Source: Adineta vaga (Eukaryota; Animalia; Rotifera). Taken from it: a DNA stretch of 64,000 bases. The notes below the pieces were generated by a model. The model was given only the letters and a program-made list of their open reading frames with translations, did no database searches and was not told the DNA's origin. The DNA lies in the NCBI GenBank assembly GCA_021613535.1, contig CP075495.1, forward strand, positions 2,976,001-3,040,000, read 5' to 3'. Each line of letters opens with the position of its first letter. Positions within the stretch are counted from its first letter, which is position 1. Of the stretch, positions 34,228 through 48,188 are shown piece by piece. A program made the translations under genes and the position numbers.

Positions 34228-37200
34228 TTAATTAGTTCCATATGTTAATCCTGAGTGGACAGGAGTGTATTCGCAGATTGTTTTAAAGTATTAGCAAACC
34301 AATTACGAAGATATGCATTATTTGTTTGAGCTCCAAATTTCGGATTTAGAAACCATTCAAGTTCAACATATGCATCTGAATCAGTCAAACGAGGTACAAT
34401 CTATAATTAATAGAATATGTAACATTAATATGAGTAGATGAATACAATTTTAAACATACTTTTGATAAAGTTTCATCGTCATTTTCTATTTTAACAGTCT
34501 GTTCTCCTGTGAGAAGAACGAATAATTCTCGTAAAATTGAGTGTATTTGATTCTAGTAGAAAAATAAAGAACAAATGATTCATGTAGTTTAATGATCTTT
34601 ATGGTTTACTTGATTTATTTGTCTTGGATCTGTTTCTGCAATCTGAGCAAGTGGTAAATATCTAGAAAATAGAATGAGATTATTATTTTCAAAATGACTT
34701 CATTGTAAGATATAGAAATCAGTAAACATACTTTTTATGTAAATGAAGTAATTTTTCTAATGGTACAGACACAACATTAATCAAATCATCATTTCCAGTT
34801 GTATAAAAACCAAAAACAGGTGATAATTTTTCGTTTTCTCCTTGTAATGTATATATACGTATTGTATTCGATGAATACCATGCTAAACTAAATTCTGTTT
34901 TTAATTGTTCGTCAGATAGTTCTTTTTTTAGCATATTCAAATGAATATTTGGACAATGTTCAAGATCATCATCATTCATTCCATCATTGCCATTTATTTG
35001 TGCACTACGAATCTTTCGTGCTGATGAAACTGATGCTCGACTTGGTAATTTATCTGTTGATGATGAAGTTATTTGTAATACATTGTCATGATAGATATCC
35101 GATGGATATATTGACATACATTGTGATGAATAATGATAGAGAGATTGTAAAGTTTGTGTGACGCCAACAAAGCGTGGAAATACGTGTAAAAAGAAAAGAT
35201 TTGAACGACCAACGGCATCACAATCAAATGAAAGTAATTGACGATTATCAAGACGTTTAGCAACATTATTTTGATAATCTGAAGAAAGAAAGGAAATGAA
35301 AAATGAAAAAGAGATGATAATATCTTACTAAGAAGATGTAACCATGTTAAATCTTGTGTGGCTGTCATATTGAGACGATCAAGTTTCGAATCAAATGATT
35401 CTGGTAAAGATTTTGCTTCGAAATGTGGTGCTAATGTTAAAACTTCTTTTTCGGCTTGACCTATTTGAATCAATAGATTATAATTGTAAGATTGAAATTC
35501 AATTTATTAAACTCACTTTTAAAAATACGTCGACGTTCTGGAAATACAAAATAACCGATGATATCACCTGCTAAGTATGTGGGCCAATTTACTTCATCTG
35601 TTTCAGAGAATTCTTCAGCTAGGCCAGGTAATTGTACACTAAACAATGACAAAAAAGAGCAATTTCATGTAACTACTTTGTTCAACTTTTCGAAATACCG
35701 TTGTTTTTGATTGACTGCCATTTGTGTTGCAGTACGTATCGCTATTGATGCTGCTTGTTTTATCTGTTGTTGTTGTTGTTGTTGTTTTTGATGTTGAGTA
35801 TTCGAAGTATTATTCGAAACAGCAACACTAGCACGTACTTTCGTTTGTTGCTGTTGTGTAGATACTGATGATGGATCAGTTGCTTGACCTTGTGATCTGA
35901 CTAATGGTAAAGATTTGATTGATAATTTTCGTGTGACATCGATCGATACGCGTGTATATTCAAGTAAGACAATGGCCAATTCAAAATAACATGTTTGAAT
36001 AAATTGACCATCATTTGTACTAAAATAACAGAGACGAATAGCATCTAATAGATATTGTACAACTGTTTTTAATGGAATTGTTATTGTAGACGTTAAATTA
36101 ATACGTTTTTGTAAACGACCAATACGAGCTAAATGTAAAAGACATTCATAATCAATATTAACATAACGTTCGACTAATGTTCGATTCAATGTTAAACATT
36201 GACGAAATAATGTTTGTGCATTCTCAAATAGATTATTCATTGTTGGATTTTCATTTAATGATCGATATGCTGAATCAACAATGATTGTTGCTGTACGTAA
36301 TTTAGCAAATACTAATGGAAGAAGTAGTGGTGAATAGAGATTTGTTAATGGAATAATAGGCATTGAAAACCAATCGTGAGGATGAGTAGAACTTGTCATT
36401 TGAATACGTTCACGCATTTGAACAAGCTAAATAGAAAAGAATCAAATTTCGAGCAAGATTTTTCATCAGAATATAAATATACATACAAAATCTAGTATTG
36501 ATGATTGTAATTTATCATTTTCTTTTTCTTCAATAAATTTCGTAACAGTTCCATTGAAATCTTGAACACATTGATGTTCCCAAAGAAGTATTTGTGCTAA
36601 TGATTTATTACATAAAATCTCGACAGACAAAAGATTATTCTGTTGAACTAAAGCTGATTGAAATAATTGACAAGCTGTATTCAAACGTTGTATATTTTCT
36701 TTAATATCTACTAATTCACTTAAATTATGCAATGATTTATATAATAAAAACGTTGCTTGCATTGATTCCGATTGATATTGTTCAGATTCAATTAAACCAT
36801 GATCAATATAAACATTAACATTAGCTAATTCTTCACGTATATGTTCATCGATACCTTTGACTTTGCCTAACGAATTAATTTGCTGTAAAATTATATAACA
36901 AAGATAAGCACGTTGTTTTAACCATGTATAAACATTTAAATTATGTGAATAACGACTATTAAAAAGGATATTCAATGCATTCAATGTTTTTTGTGGATGT
37001 CGAGTAATAGCACTTGCACGAGGATAGGATGATTTACGTTTTACTGATCTAAACAATTAAAACAATAAAAAAAAACAGAACTATGAATTTGAAATTTAAT
37101 TTACCCATTTGCTATTTTCTTTTCGGAAATATTATCTTCTCCAATAGTTGATAATACTTTTAATGTTTCTAAAGCATATCTTGCAGCTAATTGATCAAGA

Positions 37201-40200
37201 TGACATTGATGTGCACATTCAGCTAATAGTGTTAAACAATCAATAAGTAATTGATATTCAAATGATTCTAAATTTGATGGATGATCACGAGATAATTCAT
37301 CTGTTTGTTGTAAAATATTCAAACATTTCTCAGCAAATATCTTTCCAGTGCCAATAAGATAAGATTTCATATGAACAAATGAACACGATGATTCATCTGA
37401 GAAGATCACTGATTTTCCTTTTGCTATGAATGATAATTAAGATTAAATACATAAGAAAAGAAAATATTGTTCATCGACTTACTTCCATCACTACCGCTAA
37501 CAGTTGTTCGACGATATGTACGTGAGATGGGTCCAGTTAACATTTCTTTTAATTCACTATTTCTAAAAATACATATATAATTATGTTCGTATGAGAAAGA
37601 AAATCGACGGGAGAACTTACTGAAATAGATCCAGATCAGCTATGACTGGAATACGTGCTGCCAAACGAATGAAAAATAATGATAAAAGATAATGAAATTC
37701 AATCGATAGATGAGTTCCATAGAGCTGAGAAATTGTTGGAGATAGTTTTACTGTCAGAAGACCTTCCAGTGCCTAATATACATATATATATATATATATA
37801 AAGTATACATCGATTGAAAAATGACGATCGACTTACTCCGACATTATCATCTGATATAATACTTTTAGCATTATCAAAATATTTTGGCTAAAATATAGAA
37901 AATCAGGTTGATCAATTGAATGAAATATATTATTTTACTTTATATTTTGATGAATTCGTATCCGATAAACTCAATCGATATTGTCCTGGTAGTTGTGGAT
38001 GAGGTAATTTTTGTCCATCAATAAGCATATAAATAATTTCATGTGCTTCATGAAATAAATTCAAATGAATTAAAGCACGTAAACGTAAAAGTCGAGCTTG
38101 TACTGTATGTTGAGTATTTCGACAATGTAAAGCAAAAACATCATACAATGAAATAACCGGAAGAACCTAGAGGAGAATTTATATTTATCGACATACATTT
38201 TTCCATATTTAGCTTACTTGAAGACAAATATCATGACGAATGAGTGCTTCACTCGTATAAGCTAATGTATCCATCAATGTCCATGGATTTAAACGAAATT
38301 CATCGCTTGTTAATTGTACACCGGGCCATACATGAACAGAATGGTCAATAAATAAAGTTGCATAATCCAGATCATGTTCCGAATGTGGTAAAGTATAGAA
38401 GAATATTGAACGTAGAAAATAGGCACTTAATAAACATGTTTGAAGATGTTGATCACAATTTAAATGAATATGATATCTAAAAGAAATTTGGAATAGAAGA
38501 ATTAAAAAGGAAATCTCAATATTTACTTTGCTAATTTTGATATAACTATAGCACACAATAAACATCCCCAAATACCACATTTTTGAATCAATTGTGTACG
38601 ATTTGATAATAAATTTTTTAATGAATCTTTTTTAAACCAAGTTGTGATAACATCCGTACTATCGAGTATTGTATCAATTACATCGCACCAGACAGTTTTC
38701 GATTCCCTAGAAAGTATTAACTATATGTTTTAGTCTCATGAGATAGTATTGATGTCACTTACATTAATTTATCGCAATGAAAATATAGATCACCCAATTC
38801 AGTCTGTATTTGACAGTAAAGATCACGACGATTTTGACCCAATAATAATTCTATATATATGTAAAAATTTGATATATCAATAGTGAGCTTTCTTCGATCT
38901 TACTCGCTAATGTTTGATATGCATCAATAACTGATTCTTTCGTAATTTTTGTTGATGGTGATGTATCAATCTTATTATTTTCTAATGGTGAGAATTCCAA
39001 TGGTTCACCAGGTGTTAATGGTCGAAATTGAAGTGTTGATATTGTTTCTTTCTTTCCAGAAATTTGTCTTTCTTGTTTGGAAGTATCTTCCGTAATCGGT
39101 GTAAAAATTAGGAAATCTTTTGTTAATTGTTGTTCTTGTTTAAATATATAGAATGCGAACATTTTTCGACATTCAATTATTGATCGAGAGGAAAAATGAG
39201 TCTTTTCTAAACCTTGTCGTAAAAGTTTACGACTAAATTCCACATCCAATGGTATACTAATCAATTCTAAGGCATGATTTGTTTCTAAATACAAGAAAAG
39301 AAAACGATAAGAATAAAAAGAAGTTCATTTGAGATAACATACGAGCATAGAAATCAAATCCTTTTGGATCAAGTCGATCATCAAGACTAAGAGGTAGACT
39401 GGGATTTTCATATGCATCATTTGAAATTTTAAAGAGTTTTTCTGGTCGAAGTGTATAAAAATCATCGGGATGTATAGGTCGTCCTAAAGTAGCAATTGCA
39501 GCATTGAAATGTGGTTGATCAATTGAATTGTGTCGATCACGTAATTGTTGTAATAATGCTGTTTGAGCAGCAATTAACAATGGACTAACTAAATCAGCAA
39601 AATAATGACTAAAAGAAAAACAAACTAAATAATAATATTCAGTCGTTTTATAATGATTTACTCGGATAGAGCATTGAATTTCATTGCTATCGTTCCTAAT
39701 TTTTCCCATTTAGCTGCAACATACAATGCATGTAATGCTCGTAAAATAAATTTCTTAACAAATCGTAGATCCATTAATATCGTTCGATCTTGTGGTTGTT
39801 CGAAATTAAATGTTGTTCCTGTCCATGAACATTCAATATTTGTAAACCATTGATTTAATTTATTTGAATTTGTATTTTTCAATTTATCATTTTGATTATC
39901 ATAGAATGGTTTTGTACGAAAGAGCATATCGAGAAGTAATTCACTTGCAATAAACATTGTTTGATAACTATGTGAAAGTAAAGCATTGATTGAAAAGATT
40001 TTATTCAATGTTGTCGTTGCAAGATATTGAATTAGTTGTTCCAAAGAATCATAAAATGATTTCGACACATTTTGTAATAATGTCCAATTATTTGAACGAT
40101 GAGCAAGTACAATTGAACGACGATAATGAACAAGAAAACGATCAATATAAGCACGAACACGTTTGAATCCATATGGATCTTGAGAATTCGATTGAGTTGG

Positions 40201-43200
40201 ATGTTCATTAGAATCATGATGGGGAGAATCTGATCGAGTGAGATTCTTCGGATGTGGAATAGAATTTGTATTTGGTACTTTTCGATCACGAACGGAATGT
40301 TGACCATCATTTTTTAAATAAACATTTGGATCTGATATTTGACCTACAAAAATGTTTTCAATAGTTAGATTTTATTATCTTCTACGATTTTCTTCTGATA
40401 TCTTACCAATGACTAGTTCATGAATAATTTCTATTCGATCTTTCACATCGGATCGTAAGAATTGAAATTCAAATGTTTGTTCTAATGTTGGATCATCAAG
40501 TATTTCATCATCGGTAATTTTTCGTAGAATTAAATTTGTTTGATCATATGTAAATAAATTTGGATTAATTCGATCAAATCGATAACGTCCATCTTCTAAT
40601 AAAACATGAAGTTTATCATTCATCTCTTTAATAACACATGGAATTCGATCAAGACAATAAAGTCCATTGAGTAATTCATATTCAGAACGCCATATTAATT
40701 CTTCATTAAGAAAGCGACGAAATTTTTTTCTAGCTTGACTTTGACGATAAAGATCAGGTAAAATATTGAATAATTTATCAATTGCCTATTAAAATCAAAA
40801 ATAAACATATCCTTGATTTTTAAATCTCTCCGTGACATTCTCCTATTTTTCTTATTGTTCTCTCTACCCACTTCGATAATGCAGGCTTAACAAAAAGAAA
40901 TTCATGACAAGTACTCCCCCCTCTTCGTGTTCTTTTTTTCTTATTAAACATAAATACTCGAAACAACTATAACTTGATAATTCTTTTCAAATCATGAAGA
41001 TAATTTCTTATTTCTTAACAATTATTATTCTGAAGATAACATTGATTGAATCAATTAATAATACAAATATTGGTATTCATATTCAAATATTTGATAATAT
41101 AGCTGAAATTCTTCAACCAATATCACCATTTGATTTACCAATTAGTTATTCTCAAGAAGAATGGAACGATATTCGAACAGATTCATTTCGATTAATTGGT
41201 GAATATATTCATATTCAAGCGCAAATTCTTTCGTATAATCGAACATCTTCAAATGGACAAAATATTCTTATTCAACGTCATCTACAAAATGATACTTATA
41301 CATCAGCTATTATGATCGATGAAACACGATATTTAATACATGATCTTATTGATAATACATATTATATTATCAGTCCTGACCGAATAAGATATTTATCCAT
41401 TCCATCTACACGTAAATATTTGGTTGATTTTGTATTTGATACAAATCATGAAGAACAACTTTATCTGCGATATTTACAAAATAATATTAAATGGAAAGTA
41501 CAGTATGATCTTTTATTAGAAATAAATGATACTGATTCGGTTTTACAAGCATATGCAGATATAAGAAATGATGGAAATTCATTATTGATGATCGATTCTG
41601 CGGAATTAATTGCCGGTGATGTCAAAATTCGATCATCTTCATCTTATTTCAGTTCGTCTTATGATACATATGCTGCATCTGATACTAGCGCAGGTGCCTT
41701 TGGTCAAGCAGTAATGTCAGTAACAACTCCGGCACCTGTAATGATTTCTCAAGGTGAAGAATTAGCTGGTGTTTATATCTTTACTATAAATGACACATTT
41801 ATTCTTGATCCTCATTCGAATTATATACTTCCAATGTTTCGTCCAACAATTGATGTTGAACGTTATGGTTCAATTGATAAATATTTTCGTTCGGCAGATA
41901 ATCGTGGTAATGCTCAACGCGCATATCGTCTTCGTGTACCAGATATCTATCTTCCGAAAGGACGTGTTTTTGTTCGTGAATCCAATCGATTAGTTGGCGA
42001 AACTACATGGGCAGATTATTCAGCAAATGAAACCAATGAATTTAATCTAGGTGAAGATCCTGATTTACAATTTCAAGAAACTATTCAATTAGTTTCACGT
42101 CGACAAGCATATGAAGCTAATGGTTATCGTTTTATATTATCAACTTATACAATGAATTTACGTTTAATTAATAATAAGAATCGTTCGATGAATTTCGAAT
42201 ATCGCTTAAGATTTTCTTCACAAGATAATTTAACATTGAAAGAAAATACGAATGAAAATCTATTACAAGTCGATGGGTCAGCAATTTTTGGTATCTTTCA
42301 ATTAAATTCCAATGATGAACAAGAATTGAAATTTACTTTTGAAACACAGTAAAAACTATTGACTATATATTTATCGATACGTTACTTTTTTGTTTTTGAT
42401 AAATCTTATTGTCAATAAAACTGTCATCGATTCGAAATGATTAAGATTTATATAAGGATTAATACTCCATGAATTAATAATACTTACGGGTTTTTGACGT
42501 TGTTCGAGTTCTTTACGAATTGTATCAGGCGTTTTTGTTGGTATAAGATAATGATATTTCGTAGGTTTAGCACGAAGAATTTTCTTTGTTAGAGCAGTTT
42601 GTTTTTTCTTTCCATTTAATTGTTGTTGTTGTTTATTCTTTTGTTCAGGACTAAATTCTGTTACTGCCGCCGCTAAATATTTCGAATATTTATAGAAAAG
42701 ATTTTTTTTCAAAGAAAACTATATCTCTTACCATATCTATTTTCATTACTACCCAATATAGCAATAATATCTTCACCTTTGGTAATAATCATTCGCCATG
42801 GACCAAGAAGAAGTTCATTTCGTTTGGAAATAAATGTTTGATTATCATCATACCAATTAAGTGTTTCATCATTCGATGATTCAAGTAAAGATTTTGTTAA
42901 AACTTGAGCAAGATATTCCATATATACTGGACGTTTTCGAAATTTTTGAACTAAAACAAAAATAGTCTATGAATGAAATGTATCGTTTGTTGATCGAATA
43001 GAAACTGACTTTCTTTATAACTATGTTGAACTGATGTTGTATTAATAAAACTGTAAACAGTTGTTGTTTCTTCATTTCCATTGAGTGCTGCTTGCATATT
43101 TCGTTCTTTAGTTACAAATCGTTCTAAGGCTTTAAGTTCTTCATTATGAATTGATGCATAATACGATTTAGGCATGATTTGTTCAGCAGCTTCATCGGAT

Positions 43201-46200
43201 AAGATAGTGTGTCCTTGTGTACCTGATGCTGATGTTTGATTGGCTCGATTCACATCATTCATTTGTGTACTTATCATTGTTGAAAGAATTTTCTTTCCGA
43301 TTTGATTGATTACATTTGACATTTTAGTTTCATTATTTTCTTGTAAATATTCACTGAGATAGGATGTCATACAAGCAACCATATGGTAGAGATTTTCTTG
43401 TGTTAATCGTGATCTTTGTTTGGTTATTTGTTGAGATATTTCTTCAAGTACAGCAAGAGATTTATCAAAGATATGATTGAGAGAGGAATAGAAGATTTTA
43501 TGAAAGATTAATGGTGTTAATAAACCATACAGATAAATAATTGATTGCAATGTATATTGTGAATCATTGAGCCAACAAGAAAGTTCTAAGGCAATTAAAA
43601 TTTGACTACAAGCATGTATACGATTGATCTAAAGAAAATGATTTGAACAAAAAATATGAAAAATGAGAGAAAAATTGATACCTGATTGGTACGATTCGAT
43701 GATGTTGGTGTTATCATATCACAATAATAATGATTTTCTTTGATAAGTATTTCCAAATTAATGAAAATTGAATTGATAAATTTTTGTAATAAAGATATCG
43801 AACTTTCAGCTACACATGAATATCGTAGTCTAAAATAGATAATAAATGTGTATGAAAACGTTTATTAACTCTTTTTCTTGTATAATTACTCGTAAAGAAC
43901 TAATGGATTTTCTGTAATCAATTCTCGTATTGAACTATCGATCTTTGCTGGTGTTCGAACAAAATATGTCCAAATTGAATGGAATGCTTTTTTAGCAACT
44001 GCATATTGTTTGATCTCATAGGATACCTAAAGAGAAATATTTTCATTGATTTAAATAAATGGCAAAACTCTAAAAACAAACTTGTGATAGAAGACATCGA
44101 ATAAATAATAATGATATTGGATTTGCTGCTAAAATTGGTTCAGTTGATTCACTAACACTTTCACCAATCAATTGTCCTTGTGCATCATAAATAGCTAATG
44201 AAAAGACGTATTTCAGATCAGGATCAAGACCAGAAATTTTCACGGATTTAATGAAACTAGCTGGAATCTAGAATGAAAACATAGATAGGAATTATTTGAG
44301 AAAAGAATAAACTAACCTGTTGACCACTGCCTGGATAATTTGTATCAGCCATGCGAGCTTTTGCATTTGGACGATCTGCTGCTCGACAAAAGATTCGATA
44401 AGTAGCGACCTACAATTAAATTTTCAACAATAAAAAGAAAGGAAATGTAAATAAATTTTACTTTGCTAGATAGAGAACCAAATTCTGGTGCTATCACATA
44501 GACAAAATTCGGTGCTCGAGCAACAACACAGGGTCGTGGAACGATTTCATTTGAGAGTTTTTCTGATTTTTGATTTTGTTGATGCCAAAAATATAAACGA
44601 TCTTCTTCTTCCGCAGCTAACAAATGTTTATAAGCTTTCTAAAAATGAACTCTATATTACAAACATTGATTCATTTCAATCCTTACCTGCATATATTCAG
44701 CTGCAAGATTGGTATCATGTCGTGTACTTGCATAGGCTGCACATAATAATGCTTTCTTATGTGAATTACCTCGTGCATCAGTAAGATATTGATCAATTGG
44801 ACCTTTTTTTATTGTTTCTAAAAGAAAGTTTCTCGATGAACTTTTATATATTGACAAATCAAGTTCTTACTAGCGTCAGATGTTTGCTCAAGAAGTGCAG
44901 CAATACGACAATAGATAAAATGTAATTCGGCATCAAGATCTTTGATAAAATTATCCATTAATTTACTAGTTTGACCTTTTTCCATATGAAAAGGTTGTGT
45001 GGCAAAAAATCGAATTTGATTAAATGAATCAGTTTCATCGTTATCATCATCATTCGAATTTGCTGACTAAATTACATAGGAAAAGTTTCCATAGAATTCT
45101 AATCAAACAAAAATATATCTGTACCCAATTTCGATCGAACAATGATGAACCATCTGATCGAATAAGATTCGATCGTGCTTGAGCTAGTACATTCAATGAT
45201 CGTGCAAGAAATTGTTCAGCAAAGAAGATTAAAGGAAAATGACGGGATAAAACTAAAGAATTATTTTCAAGTGATGAATGAGGATCAGCACTATGTGATT
45301 GTTGTTTTCGCGATTTTTCATCTTTTATTGTTGAATTTTCCTGTGATGTCTGTTGTCGTTTGAATTCATCTGTATAAGTTTGTAAGACTGATTTTGCACA
45401 ATGAGTGGTAATCGATTCACGTAATTGATCTAAACGTTGTTTATAACAATTTGTGCGAGTTGCTCCTGAAATAATGATGTTATAATGATGGTTTAAAGAA
45501 AATAAATCAATATTTTACCTTCAATATATGAACTTGGTTGAATTAAAGCGAATAATATTTGACCAAGACGAAGTGAACATTCAGCATAAGCACTTGCATC
45601 TACCACTGCAAAATTAAAACGAGACATTATTTCATGAGTTTGAAAACATAAATGAATCCACTAGAAATAAATATCAATGAATAGGTTTTTAGTAGGATCA
45701 ATATTTTACTCTAATATGATCGTGATCAAGTCGTGTTAACCAACGATGATTATCATTTGGTTCATTATAGAATCGTCGTAAAACAGGTCGACATTTGTTC
45801 CAAAGTAACAAACTAATATCAATGAGAACATCTGGTTCAATTTTTTCATGCTAAAATCAAACAAATGAACGGTATTAAAAGTTATAAACATCGTTTGAAA
45901 TACTTACAATTTGTGGATCCATTAAGACCAAAAAACAGAGATCTTCTAATAATTCTTCTACAGAACGTTCTTGATTGATTGTTTCACTTGTTTTCACTTG
46001 AACATTTGTATTCGATTCAACACGTTTTCCTTTAGCACTATCAATTAAATCTTTTACAGCTTTTGGTGTTTTCATTTTTTCTTTAGCACGTTCAGGACTT
46101 TTCTTTCGTGATCCTTCTTTACTTTTTGGTGGACTTTTACCACGTGGTTTTTTCGTTTCAGTTTCTTTCGCACCTTTGACAGCTCGTGCATTCTTTACAT

Positions 46201-48188
46201 TCTGTGCTGCTTTACGATCTTTTTCACATTGTTCAATTTCATAAAGTATTTGTAATAAAGCAAGAACAGACGTTTGACTACCACCTGCTCGATCTACTAA
46301 TTCACTTATTGGTTCCATCATCGATTCAAATACATCATGAACTTGATAATTAAATGCTAATTTAACTAACTGTAAAACATATGATAATGGTACAACATAA
46401 CGTCCTAAAGAAAAACAATAAGAACAAAGTAAGATCTATATAGAAATGAAAGACTTATTTTCTACTGACCATTAATCGCTAAATCAAGTAAATTAACGTC
46501 TTCTTTTAATGTAACATTTGGATAGATACTATTTTCATTAGCTCCTGGAATTTGATCAACATTTGCATGTTTAACTACAAAGAAAAATAGTGCGAAATCA
46601 ACAACTGATTTGTCTCTTTACCTTGTAAAATATATTGAGCTGCATAGAATAATTCTATGGTAACATCAAGTAATTCTACTTCATGTTCATTTGCTGGACC
46701 ACTTAGAACTAATCGTCGATTACTATCAGATAATGCTTGAAGTATTGCTAAAAACTGTGCACAACGACAATCAAACATATCACTAAGTAATTTTTCTGTT
46801 AATGTTCTTGGCCATGGACCACTAATTTCTTTATTTTGACGAATTTTTGGTCGAAGAACACCTTTTGCTTTTCGACGACTTTCAAAAACTGTACGTTTAA
46901 ATATCATCGTAGCAACTTTAATTGTAGCATAACGAAATGAGTTTTCAACTTGACATTTATCACCTTCAATACTAAGTGCTTGTAATTCATGAAGATTTTT
47001 AAATTGTTCCAATGCACGACGAGCAAAATTCTAAACAAATATATTAACAACTATGTAAGTTTAAATAAACTCGACATACTTCACCAGCAATTGCTTTCTA
47101 AAATAAAGATACAAATATAGATACATGTATCAATCGATTAAATTATCCTACTTCGCCATCTGCTGGTGTTCGACTATCGTAAAATGCTTCACATGCGGCA
47201 CAATACAGTGTCGATCGCCATGGTAAATATACAATGGATAACAATGGCAAACACATTTCCGTGCTAACAGCAGCCCAAACAAGATATTCGACAACCTGTA
47301 AAAAGATTAAGAACAAAAAAAAGACTTTTAAAATTCAGAACAAAGATTCATTTGAAAACCTGTAGAGAATAACCCAATGTCATTAAATAACGACTCATTT
47401 TATATAGATAAATTGTTCCATTATAAATAAGCCATGACCATCGATCATCTTTCAATGCTAGATTCATCAGTAATCGAGTAAATGATAATGCAATTAAACA
47501 TCGATCAAGTGTTTCATCAAGTTGTACTTTCACATCTTGTTCTATCGATAAATAAAATAAACAAAGTGCACAACCCATTAAAGCTTGAAACTACAGAAAA
47601 TAGAGCAGATTTATTTCGAATAGAAAGAATAAACAACATACGGATATATCAGCCGTAGCATCAGATAATCCATGTGGAAAAAATCGTTCTTCAATTTGAT
47701 CGGTTGTTTGAAAATCTTGCATATGAAACGTTCCAAATTCATTTAAATATCGTTGATAACATTGAAATAATGCCAAACTATATTTCTATTAAAATGTAAA
47801 AAAAGAAACGTTCAATATATGTTTTGTTTTCGTTGCATTTAAATTCTTACTTCATGTGCAACAAGAAATTCTCCAAGATGCATTAGTTTCTCACAATATA
47901 ATCGTACTGATACTCTTGATTGAAATGTCCCCCATAATTGAAATAGTGTCTCCGATCTAGAAACTATATTTGTAATTATTTCGTAGAAATAAATTTTTCA
48001 ACATACAATCGACCATCGATCATTTGATTAGATTTTGGTTGTTTTGCCACATAATTTTTAAAGTCCGAAATTTGATTTTCAAAACTTTGCAAAACAGGAT
48101 TTTTACTATCATCAATATATGAATAATAAGCAGCTGTATTTGTTTTAATTGAACGTTCAACAGCTTTTGTTCTCAAATTTGCTGCCAT
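34228..48188 (-). CDS. CFAP54: Cilia- and flagella-associated protein 54 (very large, many exons)
   Basis: KNPVLQSFENQI, WLIYNGTIYLY, YLPWRSTLY, MIFKRTVFESRRKAKGVLRPK, WPRTLTEKLL, ISGLDPDLKYVFSLA; continuous exon chain over about 14 kb. Confidence 0.88.
37777..37800. repeat. (TA)n microsatellite in a CFAP54 intron
   Basis: Interrupted ta run visible in the sequence. Confidence 0.8.
40994..42352 (+). CDS. Secreted DUF4139-like protein, intronless, nested antisense inside a CFAP54 intron
   Basis: 452-aa ORF with signal peptide; LRYLQNNIKWKVQYDL, LQAYADIRNDG...AELIAGDV, LPKGRVFVRE...LVGE...FNLGEDPD resemble DUF4139; host intron is 40786-42385. Confidence 0.8.
   Translation: MKIISYFLTIIILKITLIESINNTNIGIHIQIFDNIAEILQPISPFDLPISYSQEEWNDIRTDSFRLIGEYIHIQAQILSYNRTSSNGQNILIQRHLQNDTYTSAIMIDETRYLIHDLIDNTYYIISPDRIRYLSIPSTRKYLVDFVFDTNHEEQLYLRYLQNNIKWKVQYDLLLEINDTDSVLQAYADIRNDGNSLLMIDSAELIAGDVKIRSSSSYFSSSYDTYAASDTSAGAFGQAVMSVTTPAPVMISQGEELAGVYIFTINDTFILDPHSNYILPMFRPTIDVERYGSIDKYFRSADNRGNAQRAYRLRVPDIYLPKGRVFVRESNRLVGETTWADYSANETNEFNLGEDPDLQFQETIQLVSRRQAYEANGYRFILSTYTMNLRLINNKNRSMNFEYRLRFSSQDNLTLKENTNENLLQVDGSAIFGIFQLNSNDEQELKFTFETQ

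What the first reader, a model, noticed from the sequence alone, without database searches (positions are those of the whole stretch)
40786..42420. Bacterial-type DUF4139-like gene living antisense inside an intron of the ciliary gene CFAP54
Seen: CFAP54 introns are mostly about 50-60 nt, but one is 1,600 nt (40786-42385). It is almost entirely filled by an intact, intronless 452-aa ORF on the opposite strand with a signal peptide. The stop is only 33 nt from the host donor site, and the first AATAAA (about 42414) lies inside the host exon, so the transcripts would overlap. Knowledge: DUF4139 proteins are mostly bacterial, of unknown function, often exported. Inference: a horizontally acquired gene that landed in an intron and was domesticated as a secreted protein, possibly expressed in coordination with, or exclusion of, a motile-cilia gene.
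Basis: partly seen in the sequence, partly recalled or inferred. Interest (0 to 1): 0.8.

Follow-up and report, generated by a model that had tools for sequence, protein, structure and literature searches.

The report
Bacterial-derived gene nested in rotifer CFAP54 intron
An intact, expressed, intronless gene for an exported all-beta protein sits backwards inside one large intron of the cilia gene CFAP54 in a bdelloid rotifer; it belongs to a family whose only non-rotifer relatives found are bacterial (Deinococcota), but both the acquisition and the nesting are ancient, so this is a well-documented example of known phenomena.

Summary
The ORF is real: window 40994-42352 (+), 452 aa, intact. 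RNA contigs from two studies splice CFAP54 across it. The nested transcript (about 41001-42431, after AATAAA at 42414-42419) ends inside the intron, so the mature mRNAs do not overlap.

The protein misses Pfam DUF4139 by hmmscan and is only a remote relative of it (hhalign 96.5%). Its close kin are a multigene family in bdelloids, acanthocephalans and a monogonont. The next nearest are exported proteins found in 159 of 201 sampled Deinococcota genomes. Bacterial origin is therefore likely but ancient (before or early in Syndermata). The nested copy is a diverged paralogue, not a fresh insertion.

The same CFAP54 intron holds the gene in Adineta steineri, Rotaria socialis and Didymodactylos carnosus. 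In the collinear homeologous block on contig 5, the gene survives (63% identity) but CFAP54 is gone. dN/dS is 0.13-0.41.

Function is unknown; I infer a secreted, non-enzymatic glycoprotein. Coupling to CFAP54 expression is untested. This is a new member of known kinds (nested gene; rotifer HGT family), of moderate interest.

The parts
40994..42352 (+). Nested intronless CDS, 452 aa plus stop. It encodes an exported-type all-beta protein of a Syndermata/Deinococcota subfamily remotely related to DUF4139.
   Evidence: ORF. Covered by unspliced RNA contigs 41001-42431 in four runs. 61 bdelloid homologues. dN/dS 0.13-0.41.
40786..42487 (-). CFAP54 host intron, 1,702 nt, GT..AG on the minus strand, donor GTAAGT.
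   Evidence: Joint 40784->42487 'skips 1702, CT..AC (cut +1)' in X1, X3 and X13. Sequence read.
42488..42672 (-). CFAP54 exon immediately upstream (in host sense) of the host intron, 185 nt. It ends in phase 0.
   Evidence: RNA joints at 42672/42732 and 42487. Conserved in A. steineri, R. socialis and D. carnosus.
40405..40785 (-). CFAP54 exon immediately downstream of the host intron, 381 nt. It begins in phase 0.
   Evidence: RNA joints at 40784 and 40341/40405. Conserved in the same three species.
42353..42431 (+). Minimal 3' UTR of the nested gene. It includes AATAAA at 42414-42419 and ends 56 nt before the host donor.
   Evidence: X5 contig 42294-42431. Hexamer read.
40786..40993 (+). 208 nt between the host acceptor and the nested ATG. 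This is the presumed promoter and 5' UTR of the nested gene (inferred).
   Evidence: No RNA contig coverage between 40785 and about 41001 in X1/X3/X5. A TATA-like ATAAATA lies near 40950. Inference only.
34722..47815 (-). CFAP54 host gene, approximate extent of the exons identified. It is a single copy in this genome.
   Evidence: PF14858 hits at window 46551-47815. Exon-by-exon collinearity with A. steineri and R. socialis. Single copy.

Best explanation
The window comes from a chromosome-scale bdelloid rotifer assembly. The collection's own names for this family's proteins point to Adineta vaga.

Shown:
- The cilia gene CFAP54 (minus strand) has one 1,702-nt intron (40786-42487) among introns of about 50-60 nt.
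- That intron contains a complete, independent transcription unit. It has a 452-aa intronless ORF on the + strand and an AATAAA signal at 42414-42419, and its RNA contigs end near 42431, still inside the intron. The two mature mRNAs therefore share no sequence.
- The same intron hosts the gene in Adineta, Rotaria and Didymodactylos.
- A collinear homeologous block on contig 5 retains the gene but has no CFAP54.

Inferred:
- The promoter lies in the 208 nt upstream of the ATG.
- The product is an all-beta, multi-sandwich protein with an N-terminal hydrophobic leader, 8 N-glycosylation sequons and no cysteines. Its family's closest non-syndermatan relatives are signal-peptide-bearing proteins present across Deinococcota. 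The family is only remotely related to canonical DUF4139/MuiA proteins.
- An ancestor of Syndermata (or at least of bdelloids plus acanthocephalans, with a monogonont copy too) acquired the gene from a bacterium. It fully adopted host composition and expanded by duplication.
- One paralogue came to lie in the CFAP54 intron before the bdelloid crown radiation.
- The block carrying CFAP54 with its nested gene was duplicated, and CFAP54 was later lost from one copy. The nested gene thus behaves as an autonomous gene.
- The protein is a secreted, non-catalytic binding or structural glycoprotein.
For: ORF and host:
- ORF at 40994-42352.
- CFAP54_N on the minus strand.

RNA:
- Ten small introns are skipped with CT..AC ends, so the runs are RNA.
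- The joint 40784->42487 appears in X1 and X3 (study P1) and X13 (study P6).
- Unspliced contigs cover 41001-42431 in all four runs, while 40786-41000 and 42432-42486 lack contig pieces.
- X5 holds only the nested gene.

Family:
- 61 bdelloid homologues and 16 matches in this genome.
- A profile search of 1.84 billion proteins gave 294 hits. The named ones are bdelloids, the acanthocephalans Pomphorhynchus and Neoechinorhynchus (the latter on a 19-Mb contig among eukaryotic genes), and Deinococcus.
- A partial Brachionus copy.
- 159 of 201 sampled Deinococcota genomes carry it.
- BLASTP against the D. roseus protein: 28% identity, E 5e-39.
- Both trees put the bacteria on one side of a branch, with support 95 and 91.
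- Atlas features and fold point to Rotifera plus Deinococcota clusters, TM 0.63-0.71.
- hhalign against canonical DUF4139: 96.5%, E 7e-10.

Conservation of the nesting:
- A. steineri, R. socialis, D. carnosus.

Homeologous block without CFAP54:
-, and A. ricciae.

Selection, composition and protein features:
- dN/dS 0.13-0.41, GC3 0.13.
- Leader and sequons.
- AF2 model, pLDDT 78, all-beta.
Against: - The strand of the nested transcript is not shown. All four runs are unstranded contigs.
- No 5' end was mapped; contigs begin at 41001-41040, just after the ATG.
- With canonical DUF4139 proteins as outgroup, the root fell among long syndermatan branches (support 61). The tree therefore does not show rotifer sequences nested within bacterial diversity, and the direction of transfer rests on taxonomic distribution.
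- In the gene tree the two Didymodactylos copies pair with each other rather than one with each Adineta/Rotaria clade. The timing of the duplication relative to the Didymodactylos split is unclear.
- No function is known for any close relative, and PDB fold matches are non-specific (Z <= 7.5).
- Secretion is inferred from hydrophobicity only.
Confidence: 0.75

Rival explanations
1. A bacterial gene was inserted directly into the CFAP54 intron by a relatively recent, bdelloid-style horizontal transfer and was then domesticated there.
For: The gene is intronless. Its nearest non-syndermatan relatives are bacterial. Bdelloids are known for abundant HGT (PMC7310846).
Against: - The nearest relatives of the nested gene are other bdelloid paralogues. 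The family also occurs in acanthocephalans and Brachionus.
- The slow-evolving rotifer clade, not the nested clade, is closest to bacteria at 40-43% identity, against 28% for the window protein.
- GC3 of 0.13 equals the host bias.
- The nesting is shared by Adineta, Rotaria and Didymodactylos.
Confidence: 0.04
2. There was no transfer into rotifers. Either the family is an old eukaryotic DUF4139 offshoot retained only in Syndermata, or Deinococcota acquired it from a rotifer.
For: The outgroup-rooted tree puts the bacterial clan inside a grade of syndermatan paralogues. The genome also carries canonical, intron-containing DUF4139 genes, so the superfamily is native to eukaryotes. Named bacterial members are all Deinococcales.
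Against: - The root has support 61 and joins long branches, a typical long-branch artefact.
- The family is present in 79% of sampled Deinococcota, in graded similarity tiers that suggest vertical descent in that phylum.
- No other eukaryote appears among the named hits of a 1.84-billion-protein search.
- All inspected syndermatan copies are single-exon.
Confidence: 0.12
3. CFAP54 is really two genes here, an N-terminal half and a C-terminal half, as annotated in A. steineri and R. socialis. The 452-aa gene would then be simply intergenic.
For: Public annotations split the locus into models of 1518/1541 aa and 1801/1819 aa on either side of the gene.
Against: Three RNA contigs from two studies join exon 40785 to exon 42488 in frame (phase 0/0) with GT..AG ends.
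Confidence: 0.02
4. The arrangement is functional. Antisense transcription of the nested gene through the host intron modulates CFAP54 expression by transcriptional interference or mutually exclusive expression, and this is why the nesting has been kept so long.
For: Same intron and orientation across three bdelloid genera. One run holds the nested gene but no CFAP54 contigs (X5).
Against: - The homeologous copy persists under purifying selection without any CFAP54 around it, so the gene does not need the host.
- Nesting is expected to be stable simply because excision without damaging the host is unlikely.
- Contig depth cannot rank expression.
Confidence: 0.1

Closest known systems
Deinococcota exported 'DUF4139 domain-containing' proteins (e.g. 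Deinococcus roseus WP_189002323, D. gobiensis, Deinobacterium chartae)
   Same: Full-length collinear homology: 28% identity, E 5e-39 to the window protein, and 40-43% to slower rotifer paralogues. Similar length (about 400-450 aa). An N-terminal leader is followed by the conserved first strand (bacterial LRIYPxFxEVR versus window IQIFDNIAEI). No cysteines. Predicted fold TM 0.63.
   Different: These are bacterial genes, often in tandem pairs, GC-rich, with a Sec-type AxA leader. Their function is also unknown, so they explain ancestry, not mechanism.
Canonical DUF4139/DUF4140 proteins (Pfam PF13598+PF13600; NCBIfam TIGR02231 'mucoidy inhibitor MuiA family')
   Same: Remote homology over about 300 C-terminal columns (hhalign 96.5%). 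Predicted structures are similar, TM 0.57-0.61. MuiA of Pseudomonas aeruginosa is linked to the envelope-stress response (PMC10418997).
   Different: The window protein scores nothing against PF13598 or TIGR02231. Its relatives stay below the curated cut-offs (<=26.6 versus 31.8 bits; <=25 versus 112.6 bits). No DUF4140 N-terminal domain is present. The rotifer genome has separate canonical DUF4139 genes with introns.
Nested (intronic, opposite-strand) protein-coding genes of animals, e.g. the cuticle-protein gene inside the Drosophila Gart intron (own knowledge)
   Same: A complete gene on the opposite strand lies inside one intron of a larger host gene, both are expressed, and the nesting is stable over long times.
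   Different: Here the host genome has about 50-60-nt introns, so the host intron is about 30 times the norm. The guest has bacterial ancestry, and a homeologous copy shows the guest outliving its host.
Bdelloid/syndermatan horizontally acquired genes (Gladyshev et al. 2008; Eyres et al. 2015; Nowell et al. 2018; Mauer et al. 2020, as cited in PMC7310846)
   Same: The gene is of non-metazoan type, physically linked to bona fide metazoan genes, expressed, and adapted to host composition.
   Different: It is shared with acanthocephalans and a monogonont. It therefore belongs to the old, pre-bdelloid layer rather than the bdelloid-specific, desiccation-associated influx.

Membership tests
Pfam DUF4139 (PF13598) | hmmscan score at or above the gathering cut-off (31.8 bits) | tested here: not met
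   Window protein: no hit at E<=1. 9 of 17 family members give sub-threshold hits, best E 2.5e-4. Deinococcus and rotifer relatives score 16-27 bits.
Pfam DUF4139 (PF13598) | Profile-level and structural homology to bona fide members | tested here: met
   hhalign of the family profile against canonical members: 96.5%, E 7.2e-10, 298 columns. ESM-Atlas fold matches to DUF4139 clusters: TM 0.57-0.61 over 336-371 residues.
NCBIfam TIGR02231 (MuiA family; DUF4140+DUF4139 architecture) | Full-length match above 112.6 bits with the N-terminal DUF4140 domain | tested here: not met
   No hit for the window protein. Relatives score at most 25 bits, against 296 bits for a canonical control, P0264. No DUF4140 hit.
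Nested intronic gene | Host exons on both sides are spliced together across the guest | tested here: met
   Joint 40784->42487 in three runs of two studies.
Nested intronic gene | The guest is a separate transcript confined to the intron | tested here: met
   Contigs cover 41001-42431 only, the intron flanks are uncovered, and X5 has the guest without the host.
Nested intronic gene | The guest is transcribed from the opposite strand | not testable with these tools
   Contigs carry no strand. Orientation is inferred from the + strand ORF and the AATAAA 12 nt before the contig end.
Horizontally acquired gene of bacterial origin | Nearest relatives outside the recipient clade are bacterial, with none in other eukaryotes | tested here: met
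   Limits: only 150 of 294 hits were listed, and most metagenomic hits are unnamed.
Horizontally acquired gene of bacterial origin | Recipient sequences nest within donor diversity in a rooted tree | tested here: inconclusive
   Bacteria and Syndermata are separated by one branch (support 95 and 91). The outgroup root is weak (61) and falls among long rotifer branches.
Horizontally acquired gene of bacterial origin | Integrated in the host genome rather than a contaminant | tested here: met
   The gene lies inside a spliced metazoan gene, in a syntenic position in four species. The acanthocephalan copy is on a 19-Mb contig among eukaryotic genes.
CFAP54 (host) | CFAP54_N domain (PF14858) above cut-off | tested here: met
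   158 bits on exon 46578-47030, plus 97 and 57 bits on neighbouring exons.

The most novel reading that the evidence does not exclude
A Deinococcota-type exported protein entered the syndermatan stem lineage and became a multi-copy animal family. The CFAP54-nested copy would then be more than a passenger: its antisense transcription inside the host pre-mRNA would be used to gate CFAP54 output, or to set its own expression in non-ciliated versus ciliated cells. That would explain why the same intron has housed it through the whole bdelloid radiation. A still bolder variant is transfer in the opposite direction, from rotifer to Deinococcota, as the weakly rooted tree hints.
Probability: 0.1. 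Interest if true: 0.6.

Novelty: new member of a known kind. Interest (0 to 1): 0.35.

Why it matters
- It is a clean, RNA-supported case of a gene of bacterial ancestry that is fully integrated into animal gene architecture, sitting inside a spliced intron of a conserved cilia gene.
- It shows that part of the 'foreign' gene content of bdelloids is shared with acanthocephalans and monogononts. That part predates bdelloid asexuality and desiccation tolerance, which bears on how HGT rates in bdelloids are counted.
- The homeologous locus, where the guest survived and the host was lost, is a natural experiment showing that nested genes can be autonomous.
- In practical terms, it flags a recurrent annotation error: CFAP54 is split in two in public bdelloid annotations.
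- It also defines a Deinococcota/Syndermata subfamily that Pfam DUF4139 does not capture.

Tried and rejected
- Pfam and NCBIfam on the single protein gave nothing.
- A PDB sequence profile search gave nothing at E<0.79.
- Foldseek against PDB gave only low-TM multi-Ig/adhesin and OST-subunit noise.
- VIA-align wide gave Z <= 7.5: glycosidase accessory beta-sandwiches for residues about 290-452 and SH3/Tudor-like barrels for 83-137. By the tool's own calibration this is too weak to infer function.
- The search for related loci on genome contigs failed with the alignment (no conserved stretch) and with the D. roseus protein (no confirmed locus). I used the genome search through a handle instead.
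- The look-up of encoding contigs for the contig-5 paralogue returned nothing because the window's own genome is withheld. I fetched it with the fetch from genomes.
- I looked for CFAP54 remnants at the contig-5 locus. None was found at E<1e-3, and only about 22-bit tblastx fragments that I treat as noise.
- I tested whether the large (about 9.1-kb) Didymodactylos intron holds the extra genes seen at the homeologous locus. It does not.
- I looked for CFAP54 beside the acanthocephalan and Brachionus copies. There is none.
- Literature: 'DUF4139' occurs in 4 papers, none on rotifers.
Exons were searched one by one by reference.
Full report
**1. The observation**

The + strand carries an intact 452-aa ORF at 40994-42352. 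Local GC (0.25-0.36) matches the window average of 0.30.

The minus strand carries a long, many-exon gene. Its exon at 46578-47030 matches Pfam CFAP54_N at 158 bits, and neighbouring exons add 97 and 57 bits. The host is therefore CFAP54. The window is G000:C2:2976001-3040000 of a 6-contig, 100.8-Mb assembly. Names attached to family members in the protein collection point to Adineta vaga.

**2. RNA evidence**

I laid Logan contigs of four runs from three studies on 38900-44400.
- In X1, X3 and X13 the contigs skip ten short stretches of 49-63 nt with CT..AC ends, which is GT..AG on the minus strand.
- The same three runs (studies P1 and P6) each have a contig joining 40784/5 to 42487/8, skipping 1,702 nt.
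- Read against the sequence, the intron is 40786-42487 with a GTAAGT donor. Both flanking exons (42488-42672 and 40405-40785) meet in phase 0.

It follows that the stop codon is 135 nt from the donor, not 33. The AATAAA at 42414-42419 is intronic.

Unspliced contigs cover 41001-42431 in all four runs, while 40786-41000 and 42432-42486 carry no contig pieces. X5 holds only this gene and no CFAP54. This is a discrete transcript that ends about 12 nt after the AATAAA, inside the intron. The mature mRNAs do not overlap, although the guest lies wholly within the host pre-mRNA.

Contigs give no strand and no reliable 5' end. The + orientation is inferred from the ORF and the poly(A) signal.

**3. 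What the protein is**

*Family scans.* hmmscan against Pfam and NCBIfam finds nothing for the protein itself.

*Close relatives.*
- The word-index search returns 61 proteins. Every one that carries a name is from a bdelloid (Adineta, Rotaria, Didymodactylos). Some are named 'DUF4139 domain-containing' by UniRef.
- The window's own genome has 16 matches. They include a 63%-identical copy on contig 5 and a tandem cluster on contig 4.

*Wider relatives.* A profile of 17 members searched against 1.84 billion representatives gives 294 hits. The named ones are:
- more bdelloid paralogues;
- the acanthocephalans Pomphorhynchus laevis (several copies) and Neoechinorhynchus agilis, the latter on a 19.4-Mb contig among SNF2, MFS and MA3 genes;
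- Deinococcus species.

A second profile search adds Deinobacterium, further Deinococcus species, a partial Brachionus calyciflorus protein, and Rotaria paralogues 40-43% identical to the D. roseus protein. The window protein aligns to the D. roseus protein over 388 residues at 28% identity, E 5e-39. In Deinococcota, 159 of 201 sampled genomes carry the family, with E-values in tiers that track genome-size classes. That suggests long residence in the phylum.

*Independent support.* ESM-Atlas features and predicted-structure search both return Rotifera and Deinococcota clusters first, at TM 0.63-0.71. DUF4139-annotated bacterial clusters follow at TM 0.57-0.61.

*Relation to canonical DUF4139.* All members of the subfamily stay below the curated cut-offs for canonical DUF4139/MuiA. 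Profile-profile comparison does support remote homology over about 300 columns, at 96.5% and E 7e-10. The rotifer genome also holds separate, intron-containing canonical DUF4139 genes. 'DUF4139-like' is fair as a superfamily label, not as family membership.

**4. Phylogeny**

- In a 75-sequence tree, all bacteria-like sequences lie on one side of a branch (SH-aLRT 95) and all syndermatan sequences on the other.
- With more rotifer, Brachionus and Deinococcales sequences plus canonical DUF4139 outgroups, the bacterial clan is recovered again (support 91). Its nearest neighbour is a slow-evolving clade of Brachionus, Didymodactylos and Rotaria.
- The outgroup attaches with support 61 among very long syndermatan branches, so the root is unresolved.
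- The window gene sits in a derived bdelloid clade: ((A. vaga C2, A. ricciae), A. steineri, Rotaria), sister to a clade of A. vaga C5, A. ricciae and A. steineri 'B' copies.

My reading is one old bacterium-to-syndermatan transfer followed by duplication. The direction rests on distribution (phylum-wide in Deinococcota, only Syndermata among eukaryotes, all inspected animal copies single-exon), not on the tree.

HGT shared by bdelloids and acanthocephalans is already discussed in the literature (PMC7310846).

**5. Age and autonomy of the nesting**

Exon-by-exon tblastn shows the homologous exons flanking the gene, in the same orientation, in:
- A. steineri;
- R. socialis;
- Didymodactylos carnosus, where the intron is about 9.1 kb.

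The nesting therefore predates the split of these genera. Public annotations of the first two species cut CFAP54 into two models at exactly this intron. The RNA joint shows this is an artefact, at least in the window's species.

CFAP54 is single-copy in this genome. Contig 5 around the 63% paralogue is nevertheless collinear, in inverted order, with window genes at 54.1-52.3 kb, with the nested gene, and with genes at 30.9-24.2 kb. It has no CFAP54 exons. A. ricciae shows the same arrangement. The simplest reading is duplication of a block already carrying the nested pair, followed by loss of the host around a surviving guest.

The copies inspected in acanthocephalans and Brachionus are not next to CFAP54.

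One caveat remains. The two Didymodactylos copies pair with each other in the tree, and the un-nested one shows no synteny with the other loci. When the duplication occurred relative to that lineage is therefore open.

**6. Selection and composition**

Pairwise Nei-Gojobori dN/dS is 0.13-0.41 among nested and un-nested copies. GC3 of the window gene is 0.13. The gene is a constrained coding sequence fully adapted to the host's AT-rich usage.

**7. Function**

- The AF2 model (pLDDT 78, pTM 0.61) is all-beta, with several sandwiches and a disordered Ser-rich loop at 215-248.
- PDB searches give only generic beta-sandwich and SH3-like similarities.
- The window clade and the bacterial homologues share an N-terminal hydrophobic leader just before the conserved first strand.
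- The window protein has 8 N-x-S/T sequons, no cysteines and no later hydrophobic span.
- Some other animal paralogues lack the leader and are cysteine-rich, so localisation has diversified.
- No invariant residues suggest a catalytic centre.

I therefore infer a secreted, glycosylated, non-enzymatic binding or structural protein. This is the weakest step of the account.

The only characterised superfamily member is MuiA of Pseudomonas, which is tied to the envelope-stress response (PMC10418997). It is too distant to transfer function.

**8. Verdict**

It is wrong about recency, about direct landing in the intron, and about exon overlap.

Nested genes and rotifer HGT are both well known. The added value lies in the pan-syndermatan/Deinococcota subfamily, the deep conservation of the nesting, and the guest outliving its host at the homeologous locus.

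Noticed in passing
L014 3492-17039; L019/L020 1-19511: Public annotations of Adineta steineri and Rotaria socialis split CFAP54 into two gene models (1518/1541 aa with CFAP54_N, plus 1801/1819 aa) exactly at the intron that holds the nested gene. RNA in the window's species shows a single spliced gene.
   Followed up: yes
G000:C5:14329000-14352000 (L015-L017) versus window 24100-54100: A collinear, inverted homeologous block. It keeps the RRM genes, the DUF4139-like gene and the OATP/MFS genes, but lacks CFAP54 and carries other genes instead (Exo_endo_phos2 and unknowns, as in A. ricciae L021).
   Followed up: partly
G000:C4:13395576-13398946 (L003, L008): A tandem cluster of at least two paralogues of the family on contig 4. 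Further copies lie on contigs 1, 2 and 4, some with in-frame stops (possible pseudogenes or introns).
   Followed up: no
G000:C4:11608266-11609300 and G000:C3:6367190-6368340 (L009, L010, L013): Canonical DUF4139 genes (115 and 96 bits) interrupted by stops or introns. These are probably the vertically inherited eukaryotic DUF4139 genes, distinct from the nested family.
   Followed up: no
window 41038 (run X3): One RNA contig matches from 41038 onward but carries 255 unlike letters before it. This may be a chimeric contig, a paralogue junction or an alternative 5' exon. Unexplained.
   Followed up: no
window 42619: A 3-nt insertion (TTG) in one X3 contig, inside the glutamine-rich stretch of the CFAP54 exon. 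It is probably an in-frame allelic or strain indel.
   Followed up: no
L023 4659-10435; P0041: Gene models fuse the DUF4139-like ORF with unrelated downstream exons: 623 aa in Didymodactylos, and 642 aa with Exo_endo_phos2 in Rotaria magnacalcarata. These are likely annotation artefacts. A further 245-aa ORF lies at L023 7711-8445, inside the large Didymodactylos intron.
   Followed up: partly
G001:C5:45632-48285 (L026 4565-7221): Deinococcus roseus carries two tandem paralogues of the family (34% identical). Many Deinococcota genomes have 2-6 copies.
   Followed up: no
P0254, P0119, P0106 versus P0001: The slow-evolving rotifer and acanthocephalan paralogues start directly at the conserved LRIYP-type strand, without a hydrophobic leader, and have 6-9 cysteines. 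The nested clade and the bacterial proteins have a leader and 0-3 cysteines. This suggests different cellular locations within the family.
   Followed up: partly
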